Source: Asterias rubens (Eukaryota). From it: a stretch of 64,000 nt of DNA. Numbering within the stretch: position 1 is the first letter of the stretch; each line of letters begins with the position of its first letter. The position numbers and the translations under genes were made by a program. The notes under the pieces were generated by a model that ran no database searches, was not told the DNA's origin, and saw only the letters and a list, made by a program, of their open reading frames with translations. Shown in pieces: positions 425-19,672 of the stretch. The stretch covers positions 10,850,001 to 10,914,000 of the forward strand of contig NC_047078.1 of the NCBI RefSeq assembly GCF_902459465.1, in the 5' to 3' direction.

Positions 425-3400
425 AAATTCAGAGCGATGAACAAATTGAAGACTGGACTGTCGAACTTCATAGTCTAGAACACTTAACAGAAAACATCAG
501 CCAACTTGACCTTCGGCTCTCCTGCACAGCAAGTGCATCCTCCGGCCCGTCCATAGCTTGGCACGTCTATTTCCCTCTGTGTGATGTTTGGAACACTCTA
601 CATCAAATGACAGAACTTGGTGTGTTGGTAGAGGATCGTGCTACATCACCATGCCTGAAGACATCTACATTGACTATCTCGGACTATGCTGAACGTGGTT
701 ATCATGGCGCAGTTATAAAGTGCAGAGCAAGTGCCACTAGAATCTCGAAATCATCTTACAAAAAAATTACGATACAGGGTAAGATTCGTCAGTGTTCGTT
801 TTGTTCCCTCTTGTCCTTGTTTCGCTGTTTCGCCTCATGCTTTCGCCCCCCTCTTTCACATAGTATCATTTCTAGTTTGTTATTTGCTTTAAAAATATAT
901 TAATTTTGTATACTTATTATATAATAATTATTAGCTTTTGAATTTATTTTTTACTTTCTATTTACTTGGGATATTTTCTGAAAATGGTATGGAATCAACG
1001 CACAAAAAATCAAACCTTATCAAAACCAAGTTTTCTCTATGTATTGTCTTGACATCAAAAGTTCAATGTAATGGTAAATAAACATAACTAAATAATGTAT
1101 TAATTGTGTTGATATGCATTGTTTTTTTTTTACTAGACCACCAACTTAAGAAATAATGTTTTCATACCGATGTATGTTAAACACTGAGGTTCGAATCCCT
1201 CTCGAGTAACATGCTTGTGGAATGTTTTCAAAAGACCTGTGAAAGTACTTGGTATTATAAGTGCTTACAAATACCAGTTTGTGTGTAAGTTTGTTAATAA
1301 GTCAAATAACTATTTAAGTTATTTCAACCTGATTGCCTAACTTCTGTTATTGCCTTACAGAATATCAATCTACGGCAGATCCATTATCAAATACGCATAT
1401 TGATATTCATAGACTGGCACAACTGCCTGTGGGAGTGAATGGTTCAAATCTGCATCTACAGTGTACAAGTTCAATTAGAAGAAACCCGACCATTCTGTGG
1501 CGAGTCTACCAGTCAAGATGCGGTATTTGGGAGAATTTCAAGATTAACAGAAAAGAGGGTGTTACCATTGAGAATAAAGAACTCTCGTCTTGTCTTCAGA
1601 CGTCGACACTAACTATATTTAGCTATCTACAAGTAGGGTACAATGGTGCTATTATAGAGTGTTCGACGTTTAATACTCGACAATCTGCAAATTATTCGGC
1701 AAACTTTACTATCTCAGGTAAGTTTCCATAATGACACTCGCACTGTCTCCAACTATAATAGTAACAACGTACTATGTTTATACCGTACTCTAAATAAAAT
1801 TGAGGTATGCAGTGTGTAAATCTCTTTGATTATTATTGGTTCTGAAAAGAATCGGTTGTTTCAGAACCGGTTGATTATACTCCAACATGCAAAGTTTCAA
1901 ATCCTACTCGAATAATAACAGAGACCACAACGGCTCTTTTAAGAGCCAACACTACCACAAGGAGATTAACGCATTGTTTTATCCACAAGTTTACTAATTA
2001 CTTATAGCTTCTTCCTCCTAAATAATGTTGTTTGCTCCCTTCAATCTCCAGAGAACGAGACTAATGAAGACATCGCAATACAGGTAGTAAAGATCGACAG
2101 CCTCGTAGAGATCAACCAAGGGGTCAATCGGTCAAATAAGCAGCTTTTGTGTACTGCCATTGGCTCATCAATTGAATGGCGAGTCTGCACTTCAAACCTG
2201 ACGTCATTGGTGATCAACGATACTTACAGTGATGTGATTATTGAAAGGAACAGGGTGTCATCGTGCGTTTTTTCGTCAACGTTAACCATTTTGAATCACC
2301 TCGAACACAGATATGCAGGCTCAGTTGTCATGTGTACAACCTCGATCCCTGCTAACACTAACAATCATTCAGCCAATTTCACTCTCCCTTCAGGTATCAT
2401 TGTTTGTTTTGAGATTTCAATGTGTGCTACCATTATTTTTATGTAGGTTTCTAAGTTTCATTGTTGTTGCTGATGGGTATAAAGATATGAAGTTTAGGGC
2501 TTAAACTACTTGTGTTGATTGTCGATGTCTACGATGTTCGTGTTAAATTCTTCTGCTGTTTCGTTTCTCTACGTTATCGTACAGGAAAATGAGTGCTTAT
2601 TTTTGTGCTTATTTACATGCCAAGTCTTGTGATCTCATTTAGTCATGTTTTAGACCGCAACCTGTCAAGTTGTGTGATCTCATCCAACCCTGTTTGGGAC
2701 CGCAATGATAGCTTTCATAATTAAGAAGAAAACGTGTTTTAGCAATGAACTGTTTATTTTTTTCAGTGGAGAAAGTGGAAGTCCAAAACATTGAAGAAAT
2801 GAACTGCACTTCATTGGAACTCGTACAGTTGGATGCTACTGCAAATACGTCAGATGGTCAGTTCGTATGCACAGTGCAAGGCAACGCAAACATATCCCAC
2901 TCGTGGCATGTCACTCGGTCAAAGTGTGGTCACTTGGATGTTGTCGACTTAGAAGCAAGTATTAGAATAAACGCACAGAAGGGACGGTTGTCAGAGTATA
3001 TGCAGAACTCTACGTTTACGATGACGAATTATTCCAATGAAGGATTTGATTGGTCAGTTATCACCTGTTCCACTTTTGACCCCTGGACAGGCACGAATTG
3101 CTCCATAAATTTAACAATTACAGGTATGTTGAACAATAGAATGCTCTTTCTTATTCAAAGGGTCTGTGTACTTCTTGTAGGACAAAAAACACAATGTCCA
3201 CAGAATTACATTAAACTTACATAGTTTGAAGATAGTGGTGTTAGAAAGCTTCCCTGAAAATTTTACTTGCTGAGGTATTGTAGTTTTGCAAACTACTCAC
3301 GTTCTACTACGCTCTTCTCTTATTTTCGTGATGCTTTGTTCCACCATTGGGTACAAACTGCTCCACAATCGGGTGCAATTTGCTCCACATAGGGTGCAAA

Positions 3401-4227
3401 CTGCTCTCCTACTATTACTCGCTTGTTCAGAAATTAAGGAACTAATTGCTTATCAGTCAGTTGAAAGAGCTCCACAGTTTGATGCAAATTGCTTCACCTG
3501 AAGGTACAAACTACTCCCGTTTCCGTACTCCATAATCGGTAAAAAAAAAAAAGTTCCACAATCAGGTGCAATTTGTTCCACATGGGTCACAAACTGCTCT
3601 CCTACTACTACTGGCTTGTTACTGCTCTGATCCAAAATGAGGGCAAATTTTACTTCAGTTGAAAAAGCTTCACAATCGTGTGCAAATTGCACAACAGGAA
3701 GGTGCAAACTACTCATCATATGCTACTCTCTCTCTCTTTTTATATATGTATCTTTTTTCTTCTTTTTTAAACATTTTTACTCAGTGCTCAAAATTGATCG
3801 ATGAAGTAATTAATGTATAGAAATGTCTGTTTAGTCAGATCAAATACAATGTGTGTGTTTTTTCCCCTAACAGGAGCGGTTGACGCAAGTCTAAAAAGCA
3901 CTTCGGAAGGCCTCAGTCTGACCGAAGTCATTAAAGGATTTGATCAATCATACCTTCGCCTTGCGTGTAATGCAAGCACTGATTCAAACGTTTTGGGGTT
4001 CAGGTGGGAAGTTTATCAGCCAGCTTGCCGATTGCAGAAAGCCTTGCTCAGCTTACCCGAGACCGGAGTGCACATACAAGAGACGCAAGTGTCGCCTTGT
4101 GTACGTTCATCTATGTTGGAGATATCAGACTACCGGGAACGAGGTTATGGTGACTCCACTATAGTGTGCAGATCGACCTCTGCGGATAATAGTTCCATGA
4201 GTTATTGGGCTAATTTTACCGTTCAAG
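425..4227 (+). CDS. Five tandem Ig-like domain exons (342-357 nt, all phase 1-1) of the adhesion GPCR
   Basis: Each exon encodes C-x(7-12)-W ... S-T-L-T-I ... (Y)-x-G-x-x-I-x-C. Examples: LRLSCTASASSGPSIAWHV...STLTISDYAERGYHGAVIKC and LHLQCTSSIRRNPTILWRV...STLTIFSYLQVGYNGAIIEC. Confidence 0.85.
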
Positions 4228-7200
4228 GTTGTATAAACAATAATGTCAGATTCAGTTAATTTTGGCTAACAGTACAGCATTTCTTTTAAAAAAAATTTGT
4301 TCAATGCCAAATGCATAATGTAACTACAACAAGAGTGTTGTAATACAAAGCTTGTGTTCCGTGAGTCAAACATGTCATATGCCAATATTTTCAGTAGCTT
4401 ATTTTGTTACAGTAACAGGTATACAAGTTCCATCCTGCAGAACGATGTGTGTTTTAGTCATAACTATTATCAATAACTCTAGGGGCTTTCCTTTTTTCCC
4501 ATTTTGTTTTTGACTGACCTCTAACCTCTGGTGTCTTTGTCTACAAACCAAGTTAAGAATTTTAGAAAAGCAAAACTAAACTTTCAATGATAAGCTGTTT
4601 TCAAACAAAATTTAATGACGGTGCACAATTTTATGACGGTGCAAATCCCTATAAAATACCACAGACCTGAGTTGTCAACATGTTATCGTCATGGGCCTCT
4701 TTAAGTCCCTACGTGAGAGTCAACGCTTGGTTTAGTCTTATCTAAAAACGGTGCTCAAAGCACAGCATTGTTTGTGTCAATGTCGGCATGTTTAACAATC
4801 GCCAGTTTGGACAACATTCTTTATGCCTCATGATTTTCTTATCTGTGTTAACATACGCAGCAGGTTTTTCAAACGGAGGAATATTCCACTCAAGTGATAA
4901 CGTCACTGACTCAAATGACCTTCATGTTTTCAAGAACTTGGAAACAACAGATCGTGACAGAGATATCTGTGGGGCTTCGAAAACCTACAAAGAGGAGGAA
5001 AAAGGTTTGTGATGGCAATGGAAAGGTTTGTGAGGAAAATGTTTGTGAGGAAAATGTAATTAAGATACTGCAAAAACAATCTGGCAAAACCCCATCGAAA
5101 TCCCACTTGGATCCCAGCGGAATCCCCCGAAGAATCCCGCTGAGACCCCAACGGGAATCCCTGGAAATTTGTATTCAGAGTAATAACTCATTATACTGTA
5201 GCAAATGTATGTTTACTCTCTACTGCACCTATCAAACTAATAGTAGGACGATTGATATATTTGTTCCACAGTTGTAACAGTCTTTGTCATGAACACTGAG
5301 GCAGGTGAATACGCCAATATTGATACGGAACTCGACAATCAGGTCTATTCCGTCAAAATACCAAGTATTGAATCGTCGGATGGTAACTGTAAGTTATAAA
5401 TCTCGCTTCTAATAATACAAAAAAATCACTGAATCGTTGAGATGTGGTCTATGACCTGCTGTGAAATTATGGAAGCACGAGAGGGACAAGGGAACATCAT
5501 TACGAGAAAGCACTATGAGAGAATTTCAGAATTTGGAAACCAAACAAATTAAACACACTTTCACCTAGTGGATGTGGTTTGGTCATTAAACTCAATGGAT
5601 GAGCAGTTACTCTTCCTTTTCCAGTTAGCAGCGCAGCCCTAATGGTTTGTGCATGATTTAACCAAGGCAACCGTCTGGAAAAAGAATTGCATGAAGATAA
5701 CGGGTGCGAGTTGCCGGATAAAAATGATGTTTAATTTGAACCCCTTACGGTACTTTTAGTGGAGCTTTGCTGTAATGTGCACAACTTATATTTCTTGCTC
5801 GATATGATTTCCTTCAACTTTTTAATTACTCTCTTTTGTTTTTTAAGCGATCGTTGTCATAAGCGTCTACAAGTCGAGCAGTAATTTCTCAGGGTCAAAC
5901 GGTGTAGAAAAACCTCTGACTTTCGGGAGCAGAATTATCGAAGTGACTGTGTTTAACGAACAGGGGTCTAAAATCACCGACTTCAGTAATGCACATGTTA
6001 GCTTAACATTTCCCGTTCAGGGGGTAAGTTGATCTTATAAATTGTTAGTCTTGCATCGGAGATAAAGAATGTAATTGGTTTTCCCCTTACACTGATGTGT
6101 GGTAAATACTTGGTACTTTCTCGAGTTATGTGTTATCTCGTGTTATCTTTTGGAGTATTTTTTTACCCGACAACAATTGATCTGAGCAAACAAGGTGTAA
6201 TTGCACATTGTTATTTTATCTGACAAACAAATGATGGCATTGGGGGTTGTGCATAGTGATGAAAATATAAACGCTCTTCAAAACTGTCAAAACTCCAAAG
6301 GGAGCCATAAAGCTGTAGCAGTTGGCAATGTGAATTGGTATTGTTGGTGAAAGTATGTTTTATTAGAAAACCAAGCCACTGTTAGAAAACGGGCGTACTC
6401 AATCATTCATGTTCAACTTCAGCTCTCTTCCCCTGAAAAATTTTTATAGCACAAGGCTGAACAAATGACCTTATTATACTTTGACGTGTCTACAGCTACA
6501 TGTCAGAGATAGAACGATGTTGAAACAATGACAACACAATACGCACACAGGATGGGCCTATGAGCAGCCTTCATTTGACCACCATTTATGTATAATACTT
6601 AGTTTATCTACACACGTTGTTATGGGATAAACATGGGGTAATCGCCATTATTCAGATGGAAGTGTAGACCATGTGAAATTTGTTTACAATAAGTTTGACC
6701 TTGTGCATTCTTTGGGTATTCTGGCAGGCAATGTACTACACTGGTCCTATCGGAAAGTTGCAGTTTAAAAATAAGTCCTAGGTTTATGAAAGTAAAAGCT
6801 TGTTAGGTTTTGAGATGTGCCCCCCTTTCATAATATCAACAGGTGATAGGGGTAAGAGTGTTAGACAGTGCAATCTCAATAAAATATAAGACACTATGTT
6901 TTCTTCCATTGGGCTGTGTACAAATCATGCCCACAGGAAGTCCATGCTCTGTGGCTCTTTTGTTAACGTGTGTTGCACAGGTCACATCATCTATAACTTT
7001 TTAATTTAATCATCAAATTGCTTTTTGCAGATGCCTGGGTACGAGCCGGTATGTTCGTTTAGTTCAGGAATGGACAAGTAAGTTGGTTACACTTTATGCA
7101 TGGCCATACACAAACAAATATTCTTGCATTCAGTGATAAAATAAACTTCTTGGTGAAAATCATGATGTAGGCCTACAGTTTTTCATGGTTCATTTTTATT

Positions 7201-10200
7201 TCTAAAATGTCCCCCTTTATGACGGCCGACTTAAAAGTCTTATTTGTAAACCTAAAGGGTTTGGTTCGCTTTTGGGCAATCCGGAGTCATCTGTTTGCTT
7301 TCTATTTTTTGATACGTCTCTAATTGTTTTCCTAATGTATTTCAATCATATATTTCTAGTTTTTGTTGCTGTGTGTTTTTGATGTTTTAAAAGCCTGCCT
7401 GCACGAACAAATGAATGAATTAAATCTGTACAAATGTATATGTTATGGTCATGTAACTTGTTTTGTCTACTTCTTTCATGCAGTGATTGGGCAACTGATG
7501 GGTGTGTTATTTTGAATTCCAACGGGTACGATAACTCTTATTGGAGCAAAGGCAATGGCAGCGTTAACATAACATGCAGTTGTGATCACCTCACACATTT
7601 CGCTGTCTTGCTGCGTCTTGGTGAGGTAAGTGAAGACAGAAAACTTATGATGAATTTTTAATGAATACAACAAATGTGAACATGCAGCCTGTGACTTGAA
7701 AAATTGTTTGCCCGAGATGTCAGTGTTCAAAAGTGGATGATTGGTGTAACGAACTCGCGGTACATCATGTCAAGTTGGTTTAATTATGCTTACAATTTAC
7801 AATTTACCACAGGGTCGATCACTGACGTCATTGGATAATACTATAATGACTATACTTTGTCAATCATGAGAAAAAGTAATAATATTAAATAAGAAAACAA
7901 AAACAAATGTTACGAGGTTGAGAATTTGTAAAATTGTTGGGTCAGCATCAACATTTGTTTGTTTGATCTTCACGCCCTCTCTCGGATGCATGCTCAGAGT
8001 TGTGTAATACAATAAGTGAGCATTTAAAAATGCTGCCACCTAGCGTTACAAAGTCTCACATTCCATCTCACTTCAAATTGTGTTTGTGCAGGTTGAGGAA
8101 ACGTTTGACACGTACATGTTGGATGTCCTAACTAAAATCGGACTAGCACTCTCCATTGTGTGTCTTGCTGTGACTTTGATGGCATACACATTGCTTCGGT
8201 AAGTATAGTCAGAAAGAATACAGTCGATAAGGTATTGTTTTATGTACACACTTATAACGTTAGATTTAACTGTGAATCTCATGAAGGCCATGTGAAATAA
8301 TTAGAGGTCAAAGGTGATCACGGCGTGGGCCCAACAGCAGACCTCGCGTAATAGATCTTTCTTTTGTTGATAAACATACCGCCTTGGTTGGCACGGTCGG
8401 CCGAATGTTAGTAAAACACTTAATTGTAAAAACAGATGCTTTAACAAAGTTAATTCAACATTTTCTGCAACTTTCAATTAAATAAATACCTCTCACAATT
8501 AGTTGTTTTGTTTTAAACAAAATAAACAAATTTTGTTCAATTGTTACAAAAAATAGCGATCTTTTCTTGATTTGCACTAATGGCTTTCCATAGTTTTCCA
8601 ATCTGGATTGGAAAAAACTCGATCTGTGACGTCGGATGTTCAGGCTAATATTGACCTCATAAACTACCACAAGAGGGCTCTCTCATGAGAGAAGTGGGTA
8701 AAATTTAGTGAGGATATTTTCAGGAGATTTTAATGTACTTTGTCAGCTGTTGTAAATTAGACTGAGAAAACTGTCTTTCGAAATAAAATGATTTGGATAA
8801 TGTATCACTTCCAAACAGAGATACAGAATGGTTTACAAATTATTTGTTAGTTTGTTTGATTAGATTGTTTGTTTGATCTCATTAACTGATGGTCGTCATA
8901 TTTGTCGTTTTTTTTTTTTGTTATTTATAACAGACTGACGAGCATCCGGATAGTAACCCACGCTAACTTAGCCTTTGCATTGATGGTCTCTGATTTTATC
9001 TTCTTTTTTATCGACACCCAAAATGTGGTAAGACTCTTTCATAAATAAGTTTGCCAACCTAGGACCGGAAACTCACTTGAACTTGTTGTGCCAATTATTT
9101 GGTTAATTACTTATTTTTATTTTTATTTTACTTCATAAAACGGGCTAGACATGTTTTGTGAAATTTAAGAAACTAAATGTGGCTCATGTGCCTGTGTCAA
9201 AGGGAACGGCCTAGGTCTGCAGAGTTTTTGTTCCCATATGGAAAACAAACTTGTGGTGGAGTTGGAGGATTCGAAAGAGGGCGCTGTCAGAAGACCTTTG
9301 AACACATAATCGACAAATGTTGGGACAGAATCTCCCGGGGGGGGGGGGGGAGGTTTCCAATCAATTGTTACGATTATGCTTTCTATCTGATCAGTGTGTA
9401 TAATAATCGTCTTAATGCAAATTTGTAACTTTGCCTAACTTTGCCAAATTCAGGTTGGCTGCACCTTAGTCGCCATCTTGCTTCACTTCTTCTTGCTGGC
9501 TGCTTTCACTTGGATGGCGCTAGAGGGCGCCTTTCTGTACATCAAAGTCAACCCAACATTCCCATGGAGAATTCGACTTCCCATTTGGCTTCTCATTGGC
9601 TGGGGTGAATATTGTCCTAAAGCTCGACTCCTTCCAACAAACACGTTGTCTAACATCACCACAACCAGAATCTGTTTAGTAAAATTAGCTATGGAGCTGG
9701 TTTACCGGCCCAATAAGACAAGAGAAAATGGACTGGCAATGAGTTTTAAAATAATTCAATATCAATGAATATCTTTCGATTTTTCTGAAATGTATTACCT
9801 TTGTTGAAAAAAGAAATCACTCACTAAACATGCTGTTGGTGCTGCTGCTTAAGTTTGATTTTTTTTTCTAAATGAACTTCAAACAGAAACATACCAGCCG
9901 TCGATTTCACCAAACTCTTCCTAACTTAAGATTAATCTTAGGACTGTAGCATGCAGACCTTAAGATTAATCCTAATTTAGGACGAGTTACTCGTCCTAAC
10001 TCGAGATAGGATTAATCCTAGCGTTTCGTGAAATCGGATGCAGGATCTTAAAATGTTCGAGTATAATATCTCAATCATTATTACCACAGGTTTCCCACTT
10101 GGTGTTGTGGTTATCTCAGCTGCTGTGAATTTCGGAGGCTATGCTGGTAATGACAGGTAATTTTGCTTAATTAAAGTATGATAAAGTATCAGTTTGAAAG

Positions 10201-13200
10201 AACAAAATTTTGATCTTATAGTTCAATTCAATGCCCCCTATACTGGTGGCATCATATTTTACTGCTTGGCTGGAGTGTTGTATTGGTGTGTACTGTTTTT
10301 TTTTCTCTTTTTTTCAATTCAAAACTTATACTTATTTCCATACTTCATGAAAACAGAGTACAAACAGGTTTTTTTAAGGAATAACCAATAAACAAAACTA
10401 TTAAATGAGGCTGAGAAAAATAAAATGGAGGCATCAGTTGAACAGAGAAACAATGCTACCCTGTTCTTCAGCAAAGTGGTAACACACTTTGACGTCATCA
10501 GTACTAGGCTCTAAACAGGCATGCTGCGAGTTGGAGTAATTTTACGTATTCTGTCTGACCCCTTTTGTCTGATGAGTTTTTATTTTTTTGTAACAGATGC
10601 TGGTTATCATATGATGACGGATTTGTCTGGGCATTCCTTGCTCCAGTTATAACCATCATACTTGTGAGTGTAGTCTCTAACATTATCTTCTATTCCTTGT
10701 TACTACTGAATTTAAAGTTTAAATAAAATTTTCCCTGAATTCTAAGTGAATAGCTTCAGAAACATAGCTGAAAGCTTGGGTGGCCAAGGCAGGGTCGTTT
10801 ATCCGCTGGATTTGTTGTAACATAGACTACTCCGCTGTCTATAAAGGGAATTCCATATTGCCTCGCACACAGACAAACCTTGGTCTGTGATATAGTAATA
10901 TAATATTGACTGACACACCTGATGACACCATCCAAGCAAGTTATTAACATATCCCACCTGGATTTGGTGAATTACACTCTCTAGACTATCTGAAAGGCAT
11001 CGTGACTGCTTTAATCTGGTGCTCGAATAAGTATTGTATTTACTTGTTTAATCTCGTCATATAGAACAGAGACGAAAGTGTCTTTACAGGTGTTCCAGTA
11101 TTTAAACACACTTGTATGTTTCTTTCAGGTTAATACTTTTATCTTGATAAGGCTGGTCTCCATTTTCTTCTCGCTGAAGGCTAACAAAAAAAAAAGTGAT
11201 GCAAAGAAGTTAAAGTAAGTGATTTCAACAATTTGGCTTACAAAACTATTTTTGTGCCAGTGAACTCTCTAGGGTTCTTTGATGAAGGTATTAAATTGAA
11301 CGCGTAGTAATCATTTGTACAAAACATTTATTCATCAATGGGGGACAACAGTTCAGGAAAGGTATTAGTTTGGTAATCACTAATAAATTAATGTAAATGG
11401 AGACTTTTGGTCAAAAGCCTTATACAGCAACTTTACATAGCATAAAGCATTTGAAGTGATGTTATCATAACTATTCGCTCTGTATTGTTGGCATCTCAAT
11501 AACTGAGGCTACTGTTCACAGAAGCTCGTCAGAATCAACAGGTGGACATACCACCATTGCATTGTTAGATCTAGATCCTAATTTCATAGTTTTTCATCAT
11601 AAAATCTCACCTTGTAAACTAAGTTATGTTTCTATTGTAGATCTGGACTTCGACTTGCCATCGTTCTGGAGCCTCTTCTGGGATTACCGTGGGTTCTTGG
11701 ACTCTTCTACACCGGGAAAGAAACTGTCGTCTTTGCTTATGCATTTGTACTCTTTAACAGTTTCCAGGTATAGTCCCTGTCACTTTTTCTCTGAGTTCGT
11801 GTTATCAACCTAATGATATTGTTCAGGGCATTTTGTCAAAACAATTTTGTTTTAAATATTTTCAATGTCGACGAATAATATTCTTGTCTTTTTCCCCCTT
11901 TTTTTCGGTGGGGGGGTGCAATAACTGTCCAAAAGTATGAAGCTGTAATGAATCAGAACAGTCATGAACTTTTGAGACCAAACAATTGAGACCGTTTGTG
12001 AAGCTTCACAGCAGTATACTTAGAAAATTCATTGTAGGCCTATAGCCAAGGACTTTTAATCGCCAAATTATTTCCTTGCCCATTCCAGATCTTATTTTTA
12101 TTTTGGTTGGGGGAGGGGGTAAGTAACTGTCCATAAGAATGGAGTTGTATTTTTTCAAAACATAATGAACATAATGACCCAATAATTGAGACCGTTTGTG
12201 AAGCTTTACAGCCGTATTTTTATTGTATAGCCAAGGAATTGTGGGACGTCAAATACTCATTTTATCTTTCATATAGAAGTTACTGTCGCCTGAAATGTGA
12301 TTTTTGCATCTTGTTTAGATTGTTGCTTTTTAATGTATTTATATCATTTTGATTTTGTTTTCTCCAGGGAGTCTTCGTGTTTCTTGGACAGTGTGTTTTC
12401 GACCAAGAGGTAGGTTTTTAGTTCTCGTGCTGTGGTTTCCTGTGCAACGTTTCGAGATTTATATGCAAAATACCTGACTGAAAAATATTTAATGATATTA
12501 TTAAATTTGTTAATTTATTGAACAGGTGATGAATTCATTCAAATCTCGATCCTCCAAGGTGGAGACCGTCAGTATCCCTCAAGACTCAACGTCTTTCACT
12601 CTGACCAGTAAGTACTCTTTGGATTATTAACTCTCTTAATAGCTATCAAGTCATTGCTTCTCACTAACCCTATAAGTAAATGGACATTTTGAGTTATCTT
12701 GTTCATATCGTTTGTTCAAACAAGCTTCAAGCATCTTAACATCAAGATGTTTGTACTGTGCGAATGCTCCAAAAGAGTTTTTGAGTTTGGCCACCAAAAC
12801 AACTTGGAAAGTACACACATGAACATCTTTTCCACTGAACGAGTGTGTTGACATTGATTTACCTTGCTAACTCATAAACCTGCGATGGGTAGTCAGTTAC
12901 TTTTCCTGGGGCATTCAGTTTTACCACTGGCCTGTGCTTGATCCAATTAAAACCACTGTTTGTAAGAGTAACTACATGGAGATAACAGGTGCAAGTTGAC
13001 AAATAAAAAGGATGTGCCCGTTTATAGCCATTTTCGAAGCATTTCTTAAATGTCTGCATTTAATTTGCCGTTTTATGCCAAACTGTGCATGAATCAGTTC
13101 ATCACGAATACCTCTTTAGTCTACCATTTTGTAAAACAAGCGTACAAGAACAGTTCCCCCAAATTACATCTCGTTGCTTGCCATTTCGCAAAGCCTGCGT

Positions 13201-15938: not shown

Positions 15939-18900
15939 GAAATACTTGAGACAACCAAGTGGAATCAAGCATAGAGATTGCATGACACCGAGAAAGATAA
16001 ATGCACCGTTGTAGCTACCAGAGAGATCGTACATCAAACCTGTTCATATATAAATAAATGAAGTTAAATAAAACATGTATGATGTCAAGTTATACTTGTA
16101 CGCTAGTTTTTATTAAGGTTCAAAGATCATAGAATCTGATGGATCAACAAAATCAACAACATGACAGCGTTTATCTGTTACACAACACAACACAGAATCA
16201 AAACTTGTACAAGTCGTAAGAAGTGTACAACCTTCATAAATGCGCATGGGTTTTGAGATTTTGAAGTATAAATGTCATATCCAATAACCTCTACCAACAT
16301 GTTGTAGTTTTAACTATTCATCAGAACAGTTTTTTCAGGTCTTAATAGTCTCCCGAGTTCAGAAATTTACTTGTAAGTGTGTCAGTAGAATACATAGCAA
16401 GACAAGTTCTCAACGAAAACTCCAGAATACGGAAGTCATTTGATGCGCAATAACACACTGATCAGGGGTAGGGTATATTCAATTATTATACCTCATACAT
16501 ATTCATGACCGAGAGTCGAGTTCTTACTGGTCCATTTATCATCACGTGCTAGGTGCTATTTTGCTCTTTACCGGGCGCCCTCATTCAAACCATATTATTT
16601 TTGTATAATAGTGACCACACCACATTCTGCTACTGCACTTACCTGGTATAAATACTAAGGTAAACCTCAGTACAGCAATTGTTATCCCAGCCCATCCAAG
16701 TGCTCCGGTCAGCAATTCCACTCCGAGGATCTGCTTAAAAAGAACTTCAAAAAGACACAAAACAGCACCAACGGAAAACAAAACAAGCACTGCTGACAGC
16801 ATCAGTTCCCAGTACAAGTTCAGCCAAGGCGTTGCGAAGAACATTGCACCGGCCGTAGAGAACAAAATCGCCATTGGGATGCTGTAAGATTTCACCCATC
16901 GGTCCAGTATGAAGCCCTGGCTTGCTCTAGCCAGTAAATGCCCAACACCAGCAACCGTCACAAACGTTGCTGCATCTTCTGCTGAAAACCCTTTGGTCTG
17001 AACCATGGAAACAAAGTACACGATCCACATGTCGAAGCTTAACTGTGAGCAGCAGAGCATAAACGTAACTGACCAGTAACGTAAATTCAGGAGCAGTTTC
17101 ACGTCCAGATTCTGAACTGCACTTTTCCACACAGCACTACATCGATCACGGAGGGTTGTATTAGCTGTCGGGTTTTGTAAGGTCGCGTTAGCTGATCGGT
17201 GGGTAGTTTGCAGTGTTTTGTTGTCTGTTGAAATCATGAGGGCGCCACACACGGTTAGATGAAATGAGAGGCCACCAAGAAGGAGTAATGTTCCCCTCCA
17301 TCCATAGGTATCTAAGAACAGCTGCGATAGAGGAGTCAAGAGCAGCATCCCGAAAGATGTACCTGTCTTCCCAATGCAGAGAGCTGTCACATAGTTCTTA
17401 TCAAAACGACGACCCACGGCTTCTTTGAGAAGGATGTCAGGAATACCAAGACTAGGTCCTTAAAACAAATAAAGTCAAACAAAGTCTTATAAAAGAAGGA
17501 TTGCATCTTTCAAACACAGTTTACAATAAGTAGAGTATTAGTGGTAACATACTGCAAAACTGGGGTGTTAACGTTAACACCGTGCGTGTTGTTAAATAAA
17601 AGAGAAAACAAAAATAACATCTGTGTGATTAAAAACAAGGCCAATTTAATTTCCCAGAAGTTAGTGTTATTTTTGTGCCGTTAAATTTGATTCTCTCTTT
17701 GGTAACTAATGTGAGAACGCCCATGGTGTCAATTTAACACCCCCTATACCCCGTATGACAGTCATCCATTTATGCAAAGAAAATTCCAACTTATGAAACA
17801 AAACAAGCAAATGATTTTCAGAATTGTCTCCTTGATTACATTTCTTACCTAAAAATAACGTTAAAATAATGGCCATTTGGAGAGCATTAGCTGTAATGGA
17901 TGCAAGTATTGCTGAAAAACCAACCGCTGTTCCACAGATGATGCAAGCAACTCCGGTCCCAAACGTTCGTCCAATTGCTCCTGAAAATGGACCTGTAACA
18001 ACAAAGACAGTGGACTTTTCCGGCTTTCCACTAAGCTCCGCCCACCGCGCACGTGAGCAAGACACGTGTACAAGCACTCCCAATGACATTCTGCACGATT
18101 CTTCCGCGCGTGCCAAATATACGCGCAGGCATGACCGAGTTTGTCCGACCACAATCATTGCTGTGATTGGTCAAATGGGTGAACGCGCACAGTTTGATTG
18201 AGAGGCCGGATCGGTCCATTAGTAGTAGGCTTTGATGTTTCCCCGGCAGGACTTCAACAGTACTATAGACCAATAGCTTGTTGAGGTGGACACGATTGGA
18301 GATTTTGTAACGCTAACTGGCAGCAAATTTACCAGGTAAATCGTCATTGTTTACGTAATTCTGAGCATGCGCATATTACCAAGAACAATGTGTTTACCTG
18401 ATAAGTCTACTGCCACCAAGCGTCCTGATAGTTTCCTATAGGAGTGCACTGTTTGGTTTGTGTATACAGACAACTTCACCTAACCCTTAGTGCATTATAC
18501 TGTTGTGTCCACCGTTTCTCAAAATGGCTGTAACGTTCGACCTGACAAAATATGTTCATAAGAGTCGAATAGCCTGGAATCCATGCACGCACGATTTGGG
18601 CACAGCTCAAAGGAAGAAAACATTCAATCTTAACGTCTATTGCAAACAAGAAATTGTTTTTCAGTAACTAAACGACAATACATGTTCTAGTCATTGTAAA
18701 AATGCGCAATTGGCTATGGAGCCCATAAACTTGTGATTGCAAGTCCGACAGTCTATACCATTGGATCAATGTTTAGGGGAGGGAAGTTGTAAACTAACCT
18801 ACGAATCCTATCATAGCACCGATCATTCCAACCATCCAGCCGATAATGGCACCATTAGTGTCGAACTGTTGCTGTAATATCGGTAACATTAGACCAAGAC

Positions 18901-19339
18901 CTTTAAATAACCCTGTCCAGATAAACGCCTGCATCCAGAGCGAAAACACAGCTATCCATCCAGACCGACCCCCGTCTTTTCCAGATACCTTATCTTGCAA
19001 GACCTCATGTGGTGAGACCTCATGTAATGAGGGTGAGGTATTAACTGGTGAGATCGCATGGAGTGGGACCTTAACTGGTGAGACCTCAACAGATGGGACC
19101 TCATGTAGTGAGACCTCAACTGGTGAGACCTCAACTGGTGAGACCTCAACTGGTGCTAACTCAACTGGTGGTAACTCAACTGGTGGTAACTCAACTGGTG
19201 GTAACTCAACTGGTGAAATCTCAACTAGTGAAACCTCAACTGGTGAAACCTCATGTGGTGCGACCCCATAATATTGTGAGGCCTCGTCCAGTAAGATGTC
19301 ATCGTCTACATCATGCATAGGAATCCGTTCATAGTCCAT
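15924..19339 (-). CDS. Monocarboxylate transporter-like MFS protein (SLC16 family), 538 aa, 4 exons
   Basis: Exons 19339-18799, 17992-17849, 17458-16643, 16039-15924; all introns are phase 1, GT-AG. Motifs: DGGRSGWIAVFS (SLC16 TM1), YGWRGTLLLLGG, terminal GLMYDLSGSYNGAF. Twelve hydrophobic segments; TAG at 15924-15926. Confidence 0.92.
18030..18210. promoter_or_regulatory. CpG-rich promoter-like segment in MCT intron 1
   Basis: GC box ccgccc 18038-18043, CACGTG 18050-18055, ATTGG 18166-18170; many CpGs in an AT-rich background. Confidence 0.4.
18309..18423. mobile_element. Uninterrupted copy of the CTCF-like-motif IR element (MCT intron 1)
   Basis: aacgctaactggcagca ... tactgccaccaagcgt. 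The reverse complement aligns to 14677-14930 with the insertion removed. Confidence 0.7.
19001..19261 (-). repeat. Coding 15-nt tandem repeat, 17 units (one extended to 21 nt), giving PVE(V/L)(S/P) pentapeptides
   Basis: + strand units such as gacctcaactggtga and taactcaactggtgg. They encode APHEVSPVEVSLVEISPVELPPVELPP... in MCT exon 1. Confidence 0.95.
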
Positions 19340-19672
19340 GTTCCCTCATGTAATTCCAATGGAAGAATTGGGAAACCTTGTAGTTGATGTTAGTTTCGGC
19401 ACTGCTGAACATAGCATTCCCACAACAAAAATGAAACACCAGAGAGATAGTGTGCTTACATCACTGTCTAAACATTTTGACAGTGCATTCATTAAATGCA
19501 TTAGATAAACATCAGCACATTTGCGACCATTGTCCCTGAGATCATCATTTATCAGTTAAATCCGATCGGACACAGGGCATGACCGACAATTGTGCATACA
19601 GCAGATGACCGTTATGTGCTTAAGGCAAAACAAAAAAAGATTTTCTCGGTAAAACATATAATACGTTTCTAA

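What the first reader, a model, noticed from the sequence alone, without database searches (positions are those of the whole stretch)
425..4227. Adhesion GPCR with an array of divergent Ig-like domains carrying an extra conserved cysteine pair
Seen: five symmetric phase-1 exons, each with the Ig B-strand Cys, C-strand Trp and F-strand Cys. Four also have a Cys 7 residues after the Trp (WHVYFPLC, WRVYQSRC, WHVTRSKC, WEVYQPAC); exon 3 has it closer (WRVC). Four have a Cys just before the E strand (TSPC, LSSC, VSSC, VSPC). Exon 4 lacks that Cys but has others (MNCTS, TNCSI). Established: vertebrate aGPCRs with Ig domains (ADGRA, ADGRF5) combine them with LRR or SEA domains, not a pure array. Inference: exon duplication built a lineage-specific, four-cysteine Ig subtype that may act as a recognition or mechanosensing ectodomain; the array may continue upstream of the window.
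Basis: partly seen in the sequence, partly recalled or inferred. Interest (0 to 1): 0.7.

Follow-up and report, generated by a model that had tools for sequence, protein, structure and literature searches.

The report
Starfish adhesion GPCR with cysteine-linked Ig array
The five exons are the last five of twelve very divergent immunoglobulin-like modules in a giant starfish-specific adhesion GPCR, and their "extra" cysteines most likely link neighbouring modules to each other rather than forming a second bond inside each module.

Summary
Window 425-4227 holds five phase-1/phase-1 exons. Each encodes a 113-118 aa module with the Cys/Trp/Cys core and the extra cysteines exactly as listed, and RNA-derived contigs splice them as predicted.

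The modules fold as an Ig sandwich in an AlphaFold model (pLDDT 82; every structural neighbour is an Ig domain). They match no Pfam family.

- The array does continue upstream, but it is not a pure Ig array. The Asterias rubens gene reads signal peptide, [LamG_3 + Ig-like] x5, Ig-like x7, stalk, GPS, 7TM, about 3,200 aa.
- A tandem paralogue lies 40 kb upstream, and a single-unit relative lies 0.9 Mb away.
- The two extra cysteines do not co-occur within domains (both present in 10 of 21).
- In the model they sit at opposite ends of the domain: the C-C' turn and the D-E turn.
- They do co-vary across junctions. The Trp+7 Cys of module n tracks the pre-E Cys of module n+1 in 12 of 13 junctions, including two joint losses.

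My reading is a chain of inter-module disulfide staples, at about 55%. No 3D test could be run.

This is a new variant of a known kind and of moderate interest.

The parts
425..778 (+). Ig-like module 8 of 12 (I8). Phase 1/1 exon with B Cys, Trp, Trp+7 Cys (PLC), pre-E Cys (SPC) and F Cys.
   Evidence: The RNA contig X1 record 2 ends this exon at 778 and joins it to 1363.
1361..1717 (+). Ig-like module 9 (I9). This is the copy that was modelled, with strands A14-20, B30-37, C43-50, C'55-58, D67-73, E78-85, F97-103 and G110-116. Cys53 lies in the C-C' turn and Cys77 in the D-E turn.
   Evidence: The splice joint 1714/2049 (cut +3) is seen in runs X6 and X1.
2052..2393 (+). Ig-like module 10 (I10). 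It lacks the Trp+7 Cys, has a lone Cys at Trp+3, and keeps the pre-E Cys.
   Evidence: The splice joint 2388/2762 (cut +5) is.
2767..3123 (+). Ig-like module 11 (I11), the most divergent copy (35% identity or less to any other) with no counterpart in the paralogue. It lacks the pre-E Cys, has the Trp+7 Cys, and has two extra Cys inside sequons (NCT before strand A, NCS before strand G).
   Evidence: X6 record 23 covers 2762-3119.
3874..4227 (+). Ig-like module 12 (I12), the last of the array, with both the Trp+7 Cys and the pre-E Cys.
   Evidence: X6 record 23 and X1 record 4 cover it.
4864..5004 (+). Stalk exon carrying one cysteine (DICGAS). This Cys is conserved in the paralogue (NICGAT) and in the single-unit relatives (DICGG, IMCGG). 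It is the candidate partner of the Trp+7 Cys of I12.
   Evidence: RNA joints 4227 to 4865 and 5002 to 5270; translation; paralogue; P0012 and P0013.
5272..5388 (+). Exon of the region between the array and the GPS (GAIN-type beta region).
   Evidence: RNA joints; conserved with the paralogue (81% aa); open frame.
5848..6023 (+). Exon of the region between the array and the GPS.
   Evidence: RNA contigs X1 record 4 and X6 record 26.
7031..7077 (+). Small exon holding the first GPS-region cysteine (PVCSF). The borders are predicted, not read from RNA.
7484..7629 (+). GPS exon: DWATDGC...ITCSCDHL/THFAVLL, with the cleavage consensus HL/T and a tethered-agonist-like TxFAVLL. The borders are predicted.
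   Evidence: PF01825 at 28.4 bits against a cut-off of 22.5.
8054..12627 (+). Nine to ten 7TM and C-terminal exons, at about 8054-8198, 8934-9027, 9454-9604, 10090-10156, 10597-10663, 11099-11214, 11641-11767, 12368-12413 and 12526 onwards. The borders are approximate.
   Evidence: 7tm_2 scores 48.2 and 25.8 bits on single exons. The exons are conserved with the paralogue at 59-96% aa. The model was built by alignment to P0012.

Best explanation
Architecture (shown, about 90% confident). The five exons encode modules 8-12 of a 12-module array of very divergent I-set-like Ig domains in an Asterias rubens adhesion GPCR of about 3,200 aa. The order is signal peptide, [LamG_3 + Ig-like] x5, Ig-like x7, one-Cys stalk, GPS with HL/T, then a 7TM of the ADGRL/D/E type. 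Every module is a phase 1/1 exon. The gene has a tandem paralogue 40 kb upstream with 3 LamG_3 and 9 Ig-like modules in the same order. A single-unit relative (LamG_3, Ig-like, GPS, 7TM; LOC117301790) lies 0.9 Mb away, so the ancestral unit is LamG_3 + Ig-like and the array grew by exon duplication.

Extra cysteines (inferred, about 55%). They are not a second disulfide inside each domain. They are inter-module staples. The Trp+7 Cys sits at the C-terminal end of module n (C-C' turn). It bonds to the pre-E Cys at the N-terminal end of module n+1 (D-E turn). The first pre-E cysteines bond to the odd seventh Cys (CGS) of the preceding LamG_3 module. The last Trp+7 Cys bonds to the single stalk Cys. 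The result would be a glycosylated, covalently cross-braced rod. It presents LamG and Ig surfaces to ligands and passes pulling force to the GPS and tethered agonist without the hinges opening.
For: Architecture:
- Searches give 12 Ig-like and 5 LamG exons, all phase 1/1.
- One search gives LamG_3 at 28-41 bits, plus GPS and 7tm_2.
- One search finds homologous signal-peptide exons in both genes.
- One search gives spliced RNA contigs.
- One search places the 7TM nearest ADGRL3 (187 bits), ADGRD1 (176) and ADGRE5 (174).
- Searches identify the single-unit relatives P0012 (Acanthaster planci) and P0013 (A. rubens).
- One search shows one-to-one module order between the paralogues, with dN/dS of 0.39-0.65.

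Ig fold:
- model pLDDT 81.8 with eight strands.
- all neighbours are Ig domains, TM up to 0.72.
- the profile reaches canonical Ig_3/I-set proteins and PDB Ig chains weakly.

Staples:
1. Position. The DSSP string puts Cys53 in the C-C' hairpin turn and Cys77 in the D-E hairpin turn. From established Ig topology these are the C-terminal and N-terminal ends of the sandwich.
2. Same-domain co-occurrence is absent: 10 both, 8 pre-E only, 3 Trp+7 only, 0 neither.
3. Junction co-occurrence. Of 13 Ig-to-Ig junctions, 10 have both cysteines, 2 have neither (I10 to I11; paralogue I8 to I9) and 1 is discordant (Fisher p = 0.038). In the discordant one the upstream module has gained a Cys at Trp+3, next to its Trp+7 Cys.
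4. Homologous last modules differ as predicted. Paralogue I9 follows a module without the Trp+7 Cys and lacks the pre-E Cys. Window I12 follows I11, which has the Trp+7 Cys, and keeps the pre-E Cys.
5. The six Ig modules followed by a LamG module all lack the Trp+7 Cys.
6. All LamG modules have an odd number of Cys, 7 or 9. All four receptors have a lone stalk Cys after their last Ig, which carries the Trp+7 Cys.
7. Under this scheme every ectodomain Cys of the paralogue is paired.
Against: - No coordinates were available. The opposite-ends argument rests on one AF2 model's strand map plus textbook Ig topology.
- No two-domain model could be made. Complex prediction was never reachable.
- The LamG-Ig model was unusable (pLDDT 46).
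- The junction statistics come from two paralogous genes, so they rest on only about three independent evolutionary events.
- In the window's gene two cysteines stay unpaired under the scheme: the I10 Trp+3 Cys and an extra Cys after the F strand of I4.
- Cysteine parity is imperfect in the distant LamG-Ig proteins P0016 and P0030.
- No full-length transcript or protein model of this gene was found in the protein libraries. The link from the Ig exons to the 7TM exons is direct only as far as the exons before the GPS.
Confidence: 0.6

Rival explanations
1. Each module is a four-cysteine Ig subtype in which the Trp+7 Cys and the pre-E Cys form a second disulfide within the same domain.
For: Ten of 21 modules, including four of the five in the window, carry both cysteines. 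Extra intradomain disulfides are common in Ig domains (general knowledge).
Against: - Eleven of 21 modules have only one of the two cysteines and none lacks both, so there is no positive association.
- Distant family members conserve the pre-E Cys but never have the Trp+7 Cys.
- In the model the two residues lie in the C-C' and D-E hairpin turns, at opposite ends of the sandwich.
- This reading leaves the odd LamG cysteine and the stalk cysteine without partners.
Confidence: 0.17
2. The extra cysteines are not structural staples within one chain. They are free thiols, or they form bonds between molecules (covalent receptor dimers or bonds to a partner protein). The junction pattern would then be an accident of shared ancestry between the two paralogues.
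For: The junction evidence rests on few independent events. Two cysteines in the window's gene remain unpaired under any scheme.
Against: - The pre-E Cys is present in 90% or more of 37 family members.
- The presence of the Trp+7 Cys follows the nature of the next module in 24 of 25 cases.
- Free cysteines in number are unusual in secreted ectodomains (general knowledge).
Confidence: 0.18
3. The array is a decaying or non-functional duplicate, and its cysteine pattern has no meaning.
For: No full-length protein model was found in the 1.84 billion-protein library. dN/dS of the modules is fairly high, at 0.39-0.65.
Against: - All 17 ectodomain exons of the window's gene, and the 12 of its paralogue, are open with intact phase-1 splice sites.
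- dN/dS is below 1 for every module.
- Spliced RNA contigs exist in two species.
- The GPS and 7TM are intact.
Confidence: 0.04

Closest known systems
Single-unit starfish receptors: Asterias rubens LOC117301790 (XP_033641691.1, 'uncharacterized protein', P0013) and the Acanthaster planci protein annotated 'adhesion G protein-coupled receptor L1-like isoform X2' (P0012)
   Same: They share the LamG_3 module, the same divergent Ig-like module (E 5e-30 and 3e-28 to the profile), the one-Cys stalk, the GPS and the 7TM. Both have the Trp+7 Cys, the pre-E Cys and the stalk Cys.
   Different: They have one LamG_3 and one Ig-like module. The window's gene has 5 and 12. Neither relative has been characterised.
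Vertebrate ADGRD1 (GPR133) and ADGRL3 (latrophilin-3)
   Same: Their 7TM regions are among the three nearest in the PDB: ADGRL3 187 bits and ADGRD1 176 bits (ADGRE5 174 bits). From general knowledge, ADGRD1 also carries an N-terminal jelly-roll (pentraxin/LamG-like) domain before the GAIN domain.
   Different: Neither has an Ig array. The LamG_3 profile finds no pentraxin or ADGRD chain in the PDB by sequence. No phylogeny was made, so orthology is untested.
Vertebrate Ig-containing adhesion GPCRs ADGRA2/ADGRA3 and ADGRF5
   Same: They have an Ig domain in the ectodomain. The ADGRA2 and ADGRA3 Ig domains are structural neighbours of the model, with TM about 0.6.
   Different: They have one to a few canonical Ig domains combined with LRR, HormR or SEA domains (general knowledge). 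There are no LamG alternation, no long array and no Trp+7 or pre-E cysteines.
Ig-array adhesion GPCRs of sponges, such as Sycon ciliatum XP_065198410.1 'hemicentin-1-like' (P0029) and the Amphimedon receptors in PMC4302439
   Same: They have long arrays of Ig domains in front of GPS and 7TM: about 21 Ig_3/I-set domains in P0029.
   Different: Their domains are canonical Ig_3/I-set and score strongly in Pfam. They resemble the starfish profile only at E 6e-5.
Siglec ectodomains (inter-domain disulfide between Ig domains 1 and 2)
   Same: They are a known case of a disulfide that ties two consecutive Ig domains together. PMC7426717 states that Siglec-3 C169 takes part in an interdomain disulfide.
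   Different: Siglecs have a single staple between the first two domains, not a repeated chain. The cysteine positions differ, and there is no sequence relationship.

Membership tests
Adhesion GPCR (class B2) | GPS motif with the four cysteines and the HL/T cleavage triad immediately before TM1 | tested here: met
   PF01825 scores 28.4 bits against a cut-off of 22.5 on window 7440-7658. The sequence is PVC...DGC...ITCSCDHLTHFAVLL.
Adhesion GPCR (class B2) | Secretin-type 7TM (7tm_2) | tested here: met
   Single exons score 48.2 and 25.8 bits against a cut-off of 20.6. The relative P0012 scores 161 bits, and its nearest PDB chains are adhesion GPCRs.
Adhesion GPCR (class B2) | Ectodomain modules and 7TM encoded by one transcript | tested here: inconclusive
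   RNA contigs join Ig exon 5 to the three exons before the GPS region. They continue 277 nt (X1 record 4) and 1,086 nt (X6 record 26) beyond the stretch that could be laid. The continuation into the 7TM exons was not seen directly.
Adhesion GPCR (class B2) | Complete GAIN domain (helical subdomain A plus beta subdomain B; PMC3321182) | not tested
   Only about 200 aa lie between the last Ig module and the cleavage site, which suggests subdomain B alone. No model was made of this region.
Immunoglobulin superfamily (Ig-like fold) | B-strand Cys, C-strand Trp and F-strand Cys core | tested here: met
   These residues are invariant in 21 genomic copies and in 37 family members.
Immunoglobulin superfamily (Ig-like fold) | Two-sheet beta sandwich with Ig strand order | tested here: met
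   The AF2 model has pLDDT 81.8, pTM 0.74 and eight strands. The 50 PDB matches listed and all 30 Swiss-Prot matches are Ig domains at probability 1.00, with TM up to 0.72. This is a prediction, not a solved structure.
Immunoglobulin superfamily (Ig-like fold) | Match to a curated Ig family model (Pfam ig, I-set, V-set, C2-set, Ig_2 or Ig_3) | tested here: not met
   None of the five modules hits any Ig family, even at E up to 10. A family profile reaches canonical Ig proteins only weakly: E 7e-10 to 6e-5 in the representative library and E 0.003 or more in the PDB.
   The counts are 10 both, 8 pre-E only, 3 Trp+7 only and 0 neither, with no positive association.
   Cys53 lies in the C-C' turn and Cys77 in the D-E turn. 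By standard Ig topology these are opposite ends. No coordinates were available, so this is inferred from the strand map.
ADGRD subfamily (GPR133-like) | Orthology of the 7TM and a pentraxin-type N-terminal domain | tested here: inconclusive
   The 7TM scores 176 bits to ADGRD1 but 187 to ADGRL3 and 174 to ADGRE5. The jelly-roll module is Pfam LamG_3 with no pentraxin hit in the PDB. No tree was built.

The most novel reading that the evidence does not exclude
The ectodomain is held together by an uninterrupted chain of inter-module disulfides. The chain runs from each LamG CGS Cys to the pre-E Cys of the next Ig, from each Ig Trp+7 Cys to the pre-E Cys of the next Ig, and from the last Ig Trp+7 Cys to the stalk Cys. 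The chain breaks at only one junction, I10 to I11. This would be a covalently braced, inextensible Ig rod of a kind not described for any adhesion GPCR. It would act as a stiff lever that passes force straight to the GPS and tethered agonist, with the single unstapled junction as a built-in hinge.
Probability: 0.5. Interest if true: 0.65.

Novelty: new variant of a known kind. Interest (0 to 1): 0.45.

Why it matters
Adhesion GPCRs are thought to sense pulling forces through their long ectodomains, but how the modules pass force on is poorly understood.

A receptor whose twelve Ig-like and five lectin-like modules appear to be tied to each other by a regular series of disulfides would be a natural experiment in ectodomain stiffness. 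Two near neighbours allow a direct comparison: a 9-module paralogue and a 1-module relative in the same genome.

The finding also defines an Ig-like subtype that no Pfam model recognises. The strong, named matches are all from starfish. That is useful for annotating echinoderm genomes, where these genes are currently 'uncharacterized', named 'latrophilin-like', or not modelled at all.

If the staple idea fails, what remains is an ordinary lineage-specific expansion by exon duplication.

Tried and rejected
- **Complex prediction.** I submitted modules I8 and I9 as two chains to test a fixed interface. The tool was unreachable on 11 attempts, so there is no result.
- **AlphaFold of the LamG-Ig pair** of P0013 with a 4-sequence alignment gave pLDDT 46 and pTM 0.44. 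This is unusable and says nothing about the LamG-Ig interface.
- **Other asteroid genomes**, wanted for more junctions, could not be reached. P0012 is not on record, and the ENA contigs of P0001 and P0004 come without DNA. P0007 sits on a 970-bp contig.
- **The search for homologous proteins** on the ectodomain of P0012 returned only P0012 itself. Its length window would exclude a protein of about 3,200 aa.
- **Pfam** on the five modules returned only sub-threshold noise: DUF7346, Mucin_bdg and DUF5888 at E 0.06 or worse.
- **The LamG profile against the PDB** returned only weak jelly-roll hits: an S-layer domain, the botulinum neurotoxin binding-domain jelly roll and a sialidase CBM, at E 0.01 or worse. 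No pentraxin or ADGRD chain appeared.
- **Literature searches** for echinoderm or starfish adhesion GPCRs with Ig domains found nothing on this gene family.
- **Positive selection** on the modules is not supported. dN/dS between paralogous modules is 0.39-0.65.
- **Pseudogene reading** rejected. All exons are open and spliced RNA exists.
- **Exon skipping.** The contigs show no skipped form, but contigs drop rare variants, so this is not evidence of absence.
Full report
**1.

The + strand of window 425-4227 carries five exons: 425-778, 1361-1717, 2052-2393, 2767-3123 and 3874-4227. Each is flanked by AG and GT, has a length that is a multiple of three, and is read in phase 1 at both ends. Their translations are 113-118 aa long and 20-38% identical to the first.
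- The Trp+7 Cys is in exons 1, 2, 4 and 5.
- Exon 3 has a Cys at Trp+3.
- The pre-E Cys is in exons 1, 2, 3 and 5.
- Exon 4 has NCT and NCS cysteines.

RNA-derived contigs of public runs confirm the splicing.
- X1 record 2 joins 637-778, 1363-1714 and 2049-2310.
- X6 record 23 joins 1406-1714, 2049-2388, 2762-3119 and 3870-4206, all across GT..AG introns.
- X1 record 4 joins exon 5 to 4864-5004, 5272-5388 and 5848-6023, then continues 277 nt further.
- X6 record 26 runs 1,086 nt beyond 6023.

**2. Where the window lies and what the gene is**

The window is G000:C18:10850001-10914000. The genome is Asterias rubens. The RefSeq protein XP_033641691.1 (P0013) lies on a contig of 13,490,323 bp, the length of C18, and is encoded at C18:9.92 Mb.

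A profile of the five exons finds 22 strong copies (E 2e-50 to 3e-22), all on C18. Seven lie directly upstream of the window, nine lie in a second cluster 40 kb upstream, and one lies at 9.93 Mb.

Reading the upstream 60 kb gives this order for the window's gene:
- a signal-peptide exon at 10827171-10827249 (MLFFAWLLLAVSLD...);
- five pairs of a large exon (248-286 aa) followed by an Ig-like exon;
- seven further Ig-like exons, the last five of which are the finding.

All of the module exons are phase 1/1. The large exons are Pfam Laminin_G_3 at 28-41 bits, above the cut-off of 27.6.

Downstream of the finding come a stalk exon, three short beta-rich exons, and a GPS exon (PF01825; CSCDHL/THFAVLL). 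Exons matching 7tm_2 follow. The protein is about 3,200 aa.

The upstream cluster is a tandem paralogue. It has a homologous signal-peptide exon, 3 LamG_3 and 9 Ig-like modules, and its own GPS and 7TM. Its modules correspond one-to-one and in order to I3-I10 and I12 of the window's gene. I11 has no counterpart.

**3. The modules are Ig-like, but not of any catalogued family**

Pfam gives no Ig hit, even at E = 10.

An AlphaFold2 model of module I9, built with 37 family sequences, has pLDDT 81.8 and pTM 0.74. It has eight strands in the order expected for an I-set-type domain.

Foldseek finds only Ig domains.
- In the PDB these include B7-H6, IgNAR constant domains, MHC class II beta-2 and neuroplastin Ig1, with TM up to 0.67.
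- In Swiss-Prot models these include PDGFR-alpha D5 (0.72), the IGFBP7 Ig domain, and the ADGRA2 and ADGRA3 Ig domains (0.6), at 12-21% identity.

The 21-copy profile was scored against 1.84 billion representative proteins and finds 31 proteins at E of 0.001 or better.
- The strong hits are single-exon ORFs of this and related starfish. The other strong hits are P0012 (Acanthaster planci, annotated 'ADGRL1-like isoform X2') and P0013 (A. rubens). Both have the architecture LamG_3, Ig-like, GPS, 7TM.
- P0016 (Patiria miniata) and P0030 (A. rubens) are LamG_3 + Ig-like proteins without a 7TM.
- The weak tail includes canonical Ig_3/I-set proteins. One is a Sycon ciliatum protein with about 21 Ig domains plus GPS and 7TM.

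So the domain is a remote Ig superfamily member. Its strong, named matches are all asteroid, and its ancestral context is the pair LamG_3 + Ig-like. No multi-repeat protein was found in the library, so this gene seems to lack a full-length model there.

**4. The extra cysteines**

Across the 21 modules of the two tandem genes the counts are as follows.

| Feature | Modules (of 21) |
|---|---|
| Pre-E Cys present | 18 |
| Trp+7 Cys present | 13 |
| Both present | 10 |
| Pre-E only | 8 |
| Trp+7 only | 3 |
| Neither | 0 |

There is no positive association within domains. Distant family members keep the pre-E Cys, which is present in 90% or more of 37 sequences. They never have the Trp+7 Cys.

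In the model, Cys53 (Trp+7) lies in the four-residue turn between strands C (43-50) and C' (55-58). Cys77 (pre-E) lies in the turn between D (67-73) and E (78-85). In the Ig fold the C-C' turn is at the end where the chain leaves the domain. The D-E turn is at the end where the chain enters it (established topology). The two residues therefore cannot bond within one domain. They are instead placed to face the neighbouring modules.

The sequence pattern fits this reading.
- **Junctions.** Of the 13 Ig-to-Ig junctions, ten have both the upstream Trp+7 Cys and the downstream pre-E Cys. Two have neither (I10 to I11 here; I8 to I9 in the paralogue). One is discordant (Fisher p = 0.038).
- **The discordant junction.** In paralogue I4 to I5, the upstream module has acquired a Cys at Trp+3, close to its Trp+7 Cys.
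- **Homologous last modules.** They differ as predicted. Paralogue I9 follows a module without the Trp+7 Cys and has no pre-E Cys. Window I12 follows I11, which has the Trp+7 Cys, and keeps the pre-E Cys.
- **Modules before a LamG.** All six Ig modules followed by a LamG module lack the Trp+7 Cys.
- **LamG cysteine count.** Every LamG module has an odd number of cysteines, 7 or 9. The seventh (CGS) lies a few residues before the junction with the next Ig module.
- **Stalk cysteine.** In all four receptors the last Ig carries the Trp+7 Cys and is followed by a stalk with a single Cys: DICGAS, NICGAT, DICGG and IMCGG. The four GPS-region cysteines can be accounted for among themselves.
- **Pairing totals.** With this scheme every ectodomain cysteine of the paralogue is paired. 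In the window's gene two remain: the I10 Trp+3 Cys and an extra Cys after the F strand of I4. The NCT and NCS cysteines of I11 lie just before strands A and G, at the same end of the domain, and could pair with each other.

I therefore favour a chain of inter-module disulfide staples, at about 55%.

The weaknesses are real. No coordinates or two-domain model were available. The complex predictor was unreachable eleven times, and the LamG-Ig model had pLDDT 46. The two genes are paralogues, so the covariation amounts to about three independent events.

**5. Other properties**

- dN/dS between corresponding modules of the two genes is 0.39-0.65. For the GAIN-region and 7TM exons it is 0.15-0.45. 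The ectodomain evolves fast but under constraint, with no sign of overall positive selection.
- The five window modules carry 20 N-glycosylation sequons. The sequon on strand G (N-F/L/I-T) is present in 17 of 21 modules.
- The GPS has the HL/T triad and a TxFAVLL tethered-agonist-like sequence. Autoproteolysis and Stachel signalling are therefore expected by analogy with other adhesion GPCRs (PMC3321182). Neither was tested.
- The 7TM of the relative P0012 is nearest to ADGRL3 (187 bits), ADGRD1 (176) and ADGRE5 (174) among solved structures. No tree was made, so the subfamily is not assigned.

**6. Comparison and verdict**

The receptor works like other adhesion GPCRs. It is a member of that class by GPS and 7TM. 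Its modules belong to the Ig superfamily by fold, but to no curated Ig family.

What appears new is threefold:
- the LamG_3 + Ig-like unit;
- its expansion to 5 + 12 modules in Asterias;
- the junction-wise cysteine pattern.

The nearest known parallel to that pattern is the single inter-domain disulfide of Siglecs (PMC7426717).

I class this as a new variant of a known kind, with interest 0.45. It would rise to about 0.65 if the staple chain is confirmed.

Noticed in passing
L013:8450-8734 (+), that is G000:C18:10848450-10848734, 1.3 kb upstream of the window and between Ig-like modules I5 and I6: An open, phase-1-compatible exon-like ORF of about 85 aa (…GKPATSAQSYAG…MARWVSIDIDPSYPG…LQLAEVSLVEY) with no Pfam hit. 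It belongs to a family of at least 100 such exons, arranged in tandem clusters on C4, C10, C12, C13 and C23 of this genome. Whether it is spliced into the receptor is unknown. The paralogue has no counterpart.
   Followed up: partly
P0030 (Asterias rubens XP_033638841.1, on another contig of this genome): A LamG_3 + Ig-like pair seems to be inserted inside a C-type lectin-like domain. The N-terminal half (CPFQW…CYRYF…) and the C-terminal FICK strand are separated by the pair.
   Followed up: no
window 16584-19345 (-): Large open exons of a Major Facilitator Superfamily transporter (MFS_1, 48.8 bits). An upstream exon of the same minus-strand gene carries a run of short Pro-Val-Glu-rich repeats (PVEVS/PVELP).
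   Followed up: partly
window 62408-62962 (-): An exon encoding a canonical C2-set Ig domain (C2-set_2, 39.4 bits) of another gene. It shows that ordinary Ig domains in this genome are recognised by Pfam, unlike the modules of the finding.
   Followed up: partly
window 1876-2072 and 3058-3451 (introns of the receptor gene): Summed contig depth is extremely high in all four runs (thousands to hundreds of thousands). The DNA search finds dozens of 78-87% identical copies of 1921-2000 across the genome. These are interspersed repeats inside the introns.
   Followed up: no
G000:C18:10814572-10815541 (L010:4572-5541), an intron of the upstream paralogue: A microsatellite of about 1 kb. It reads as (Leu-Ser)n, (Ser-Leu)n and related repeats in all three frames, which suggests a CT-rich unit.
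   Followed up: no
runs X1 and X5 (organism A) against X6 (organism B): A second, closely related species (about 3% different in exons, 5% in introns) holds the same locus. It expresses it with identical exon junctions.
   Followed up: partly
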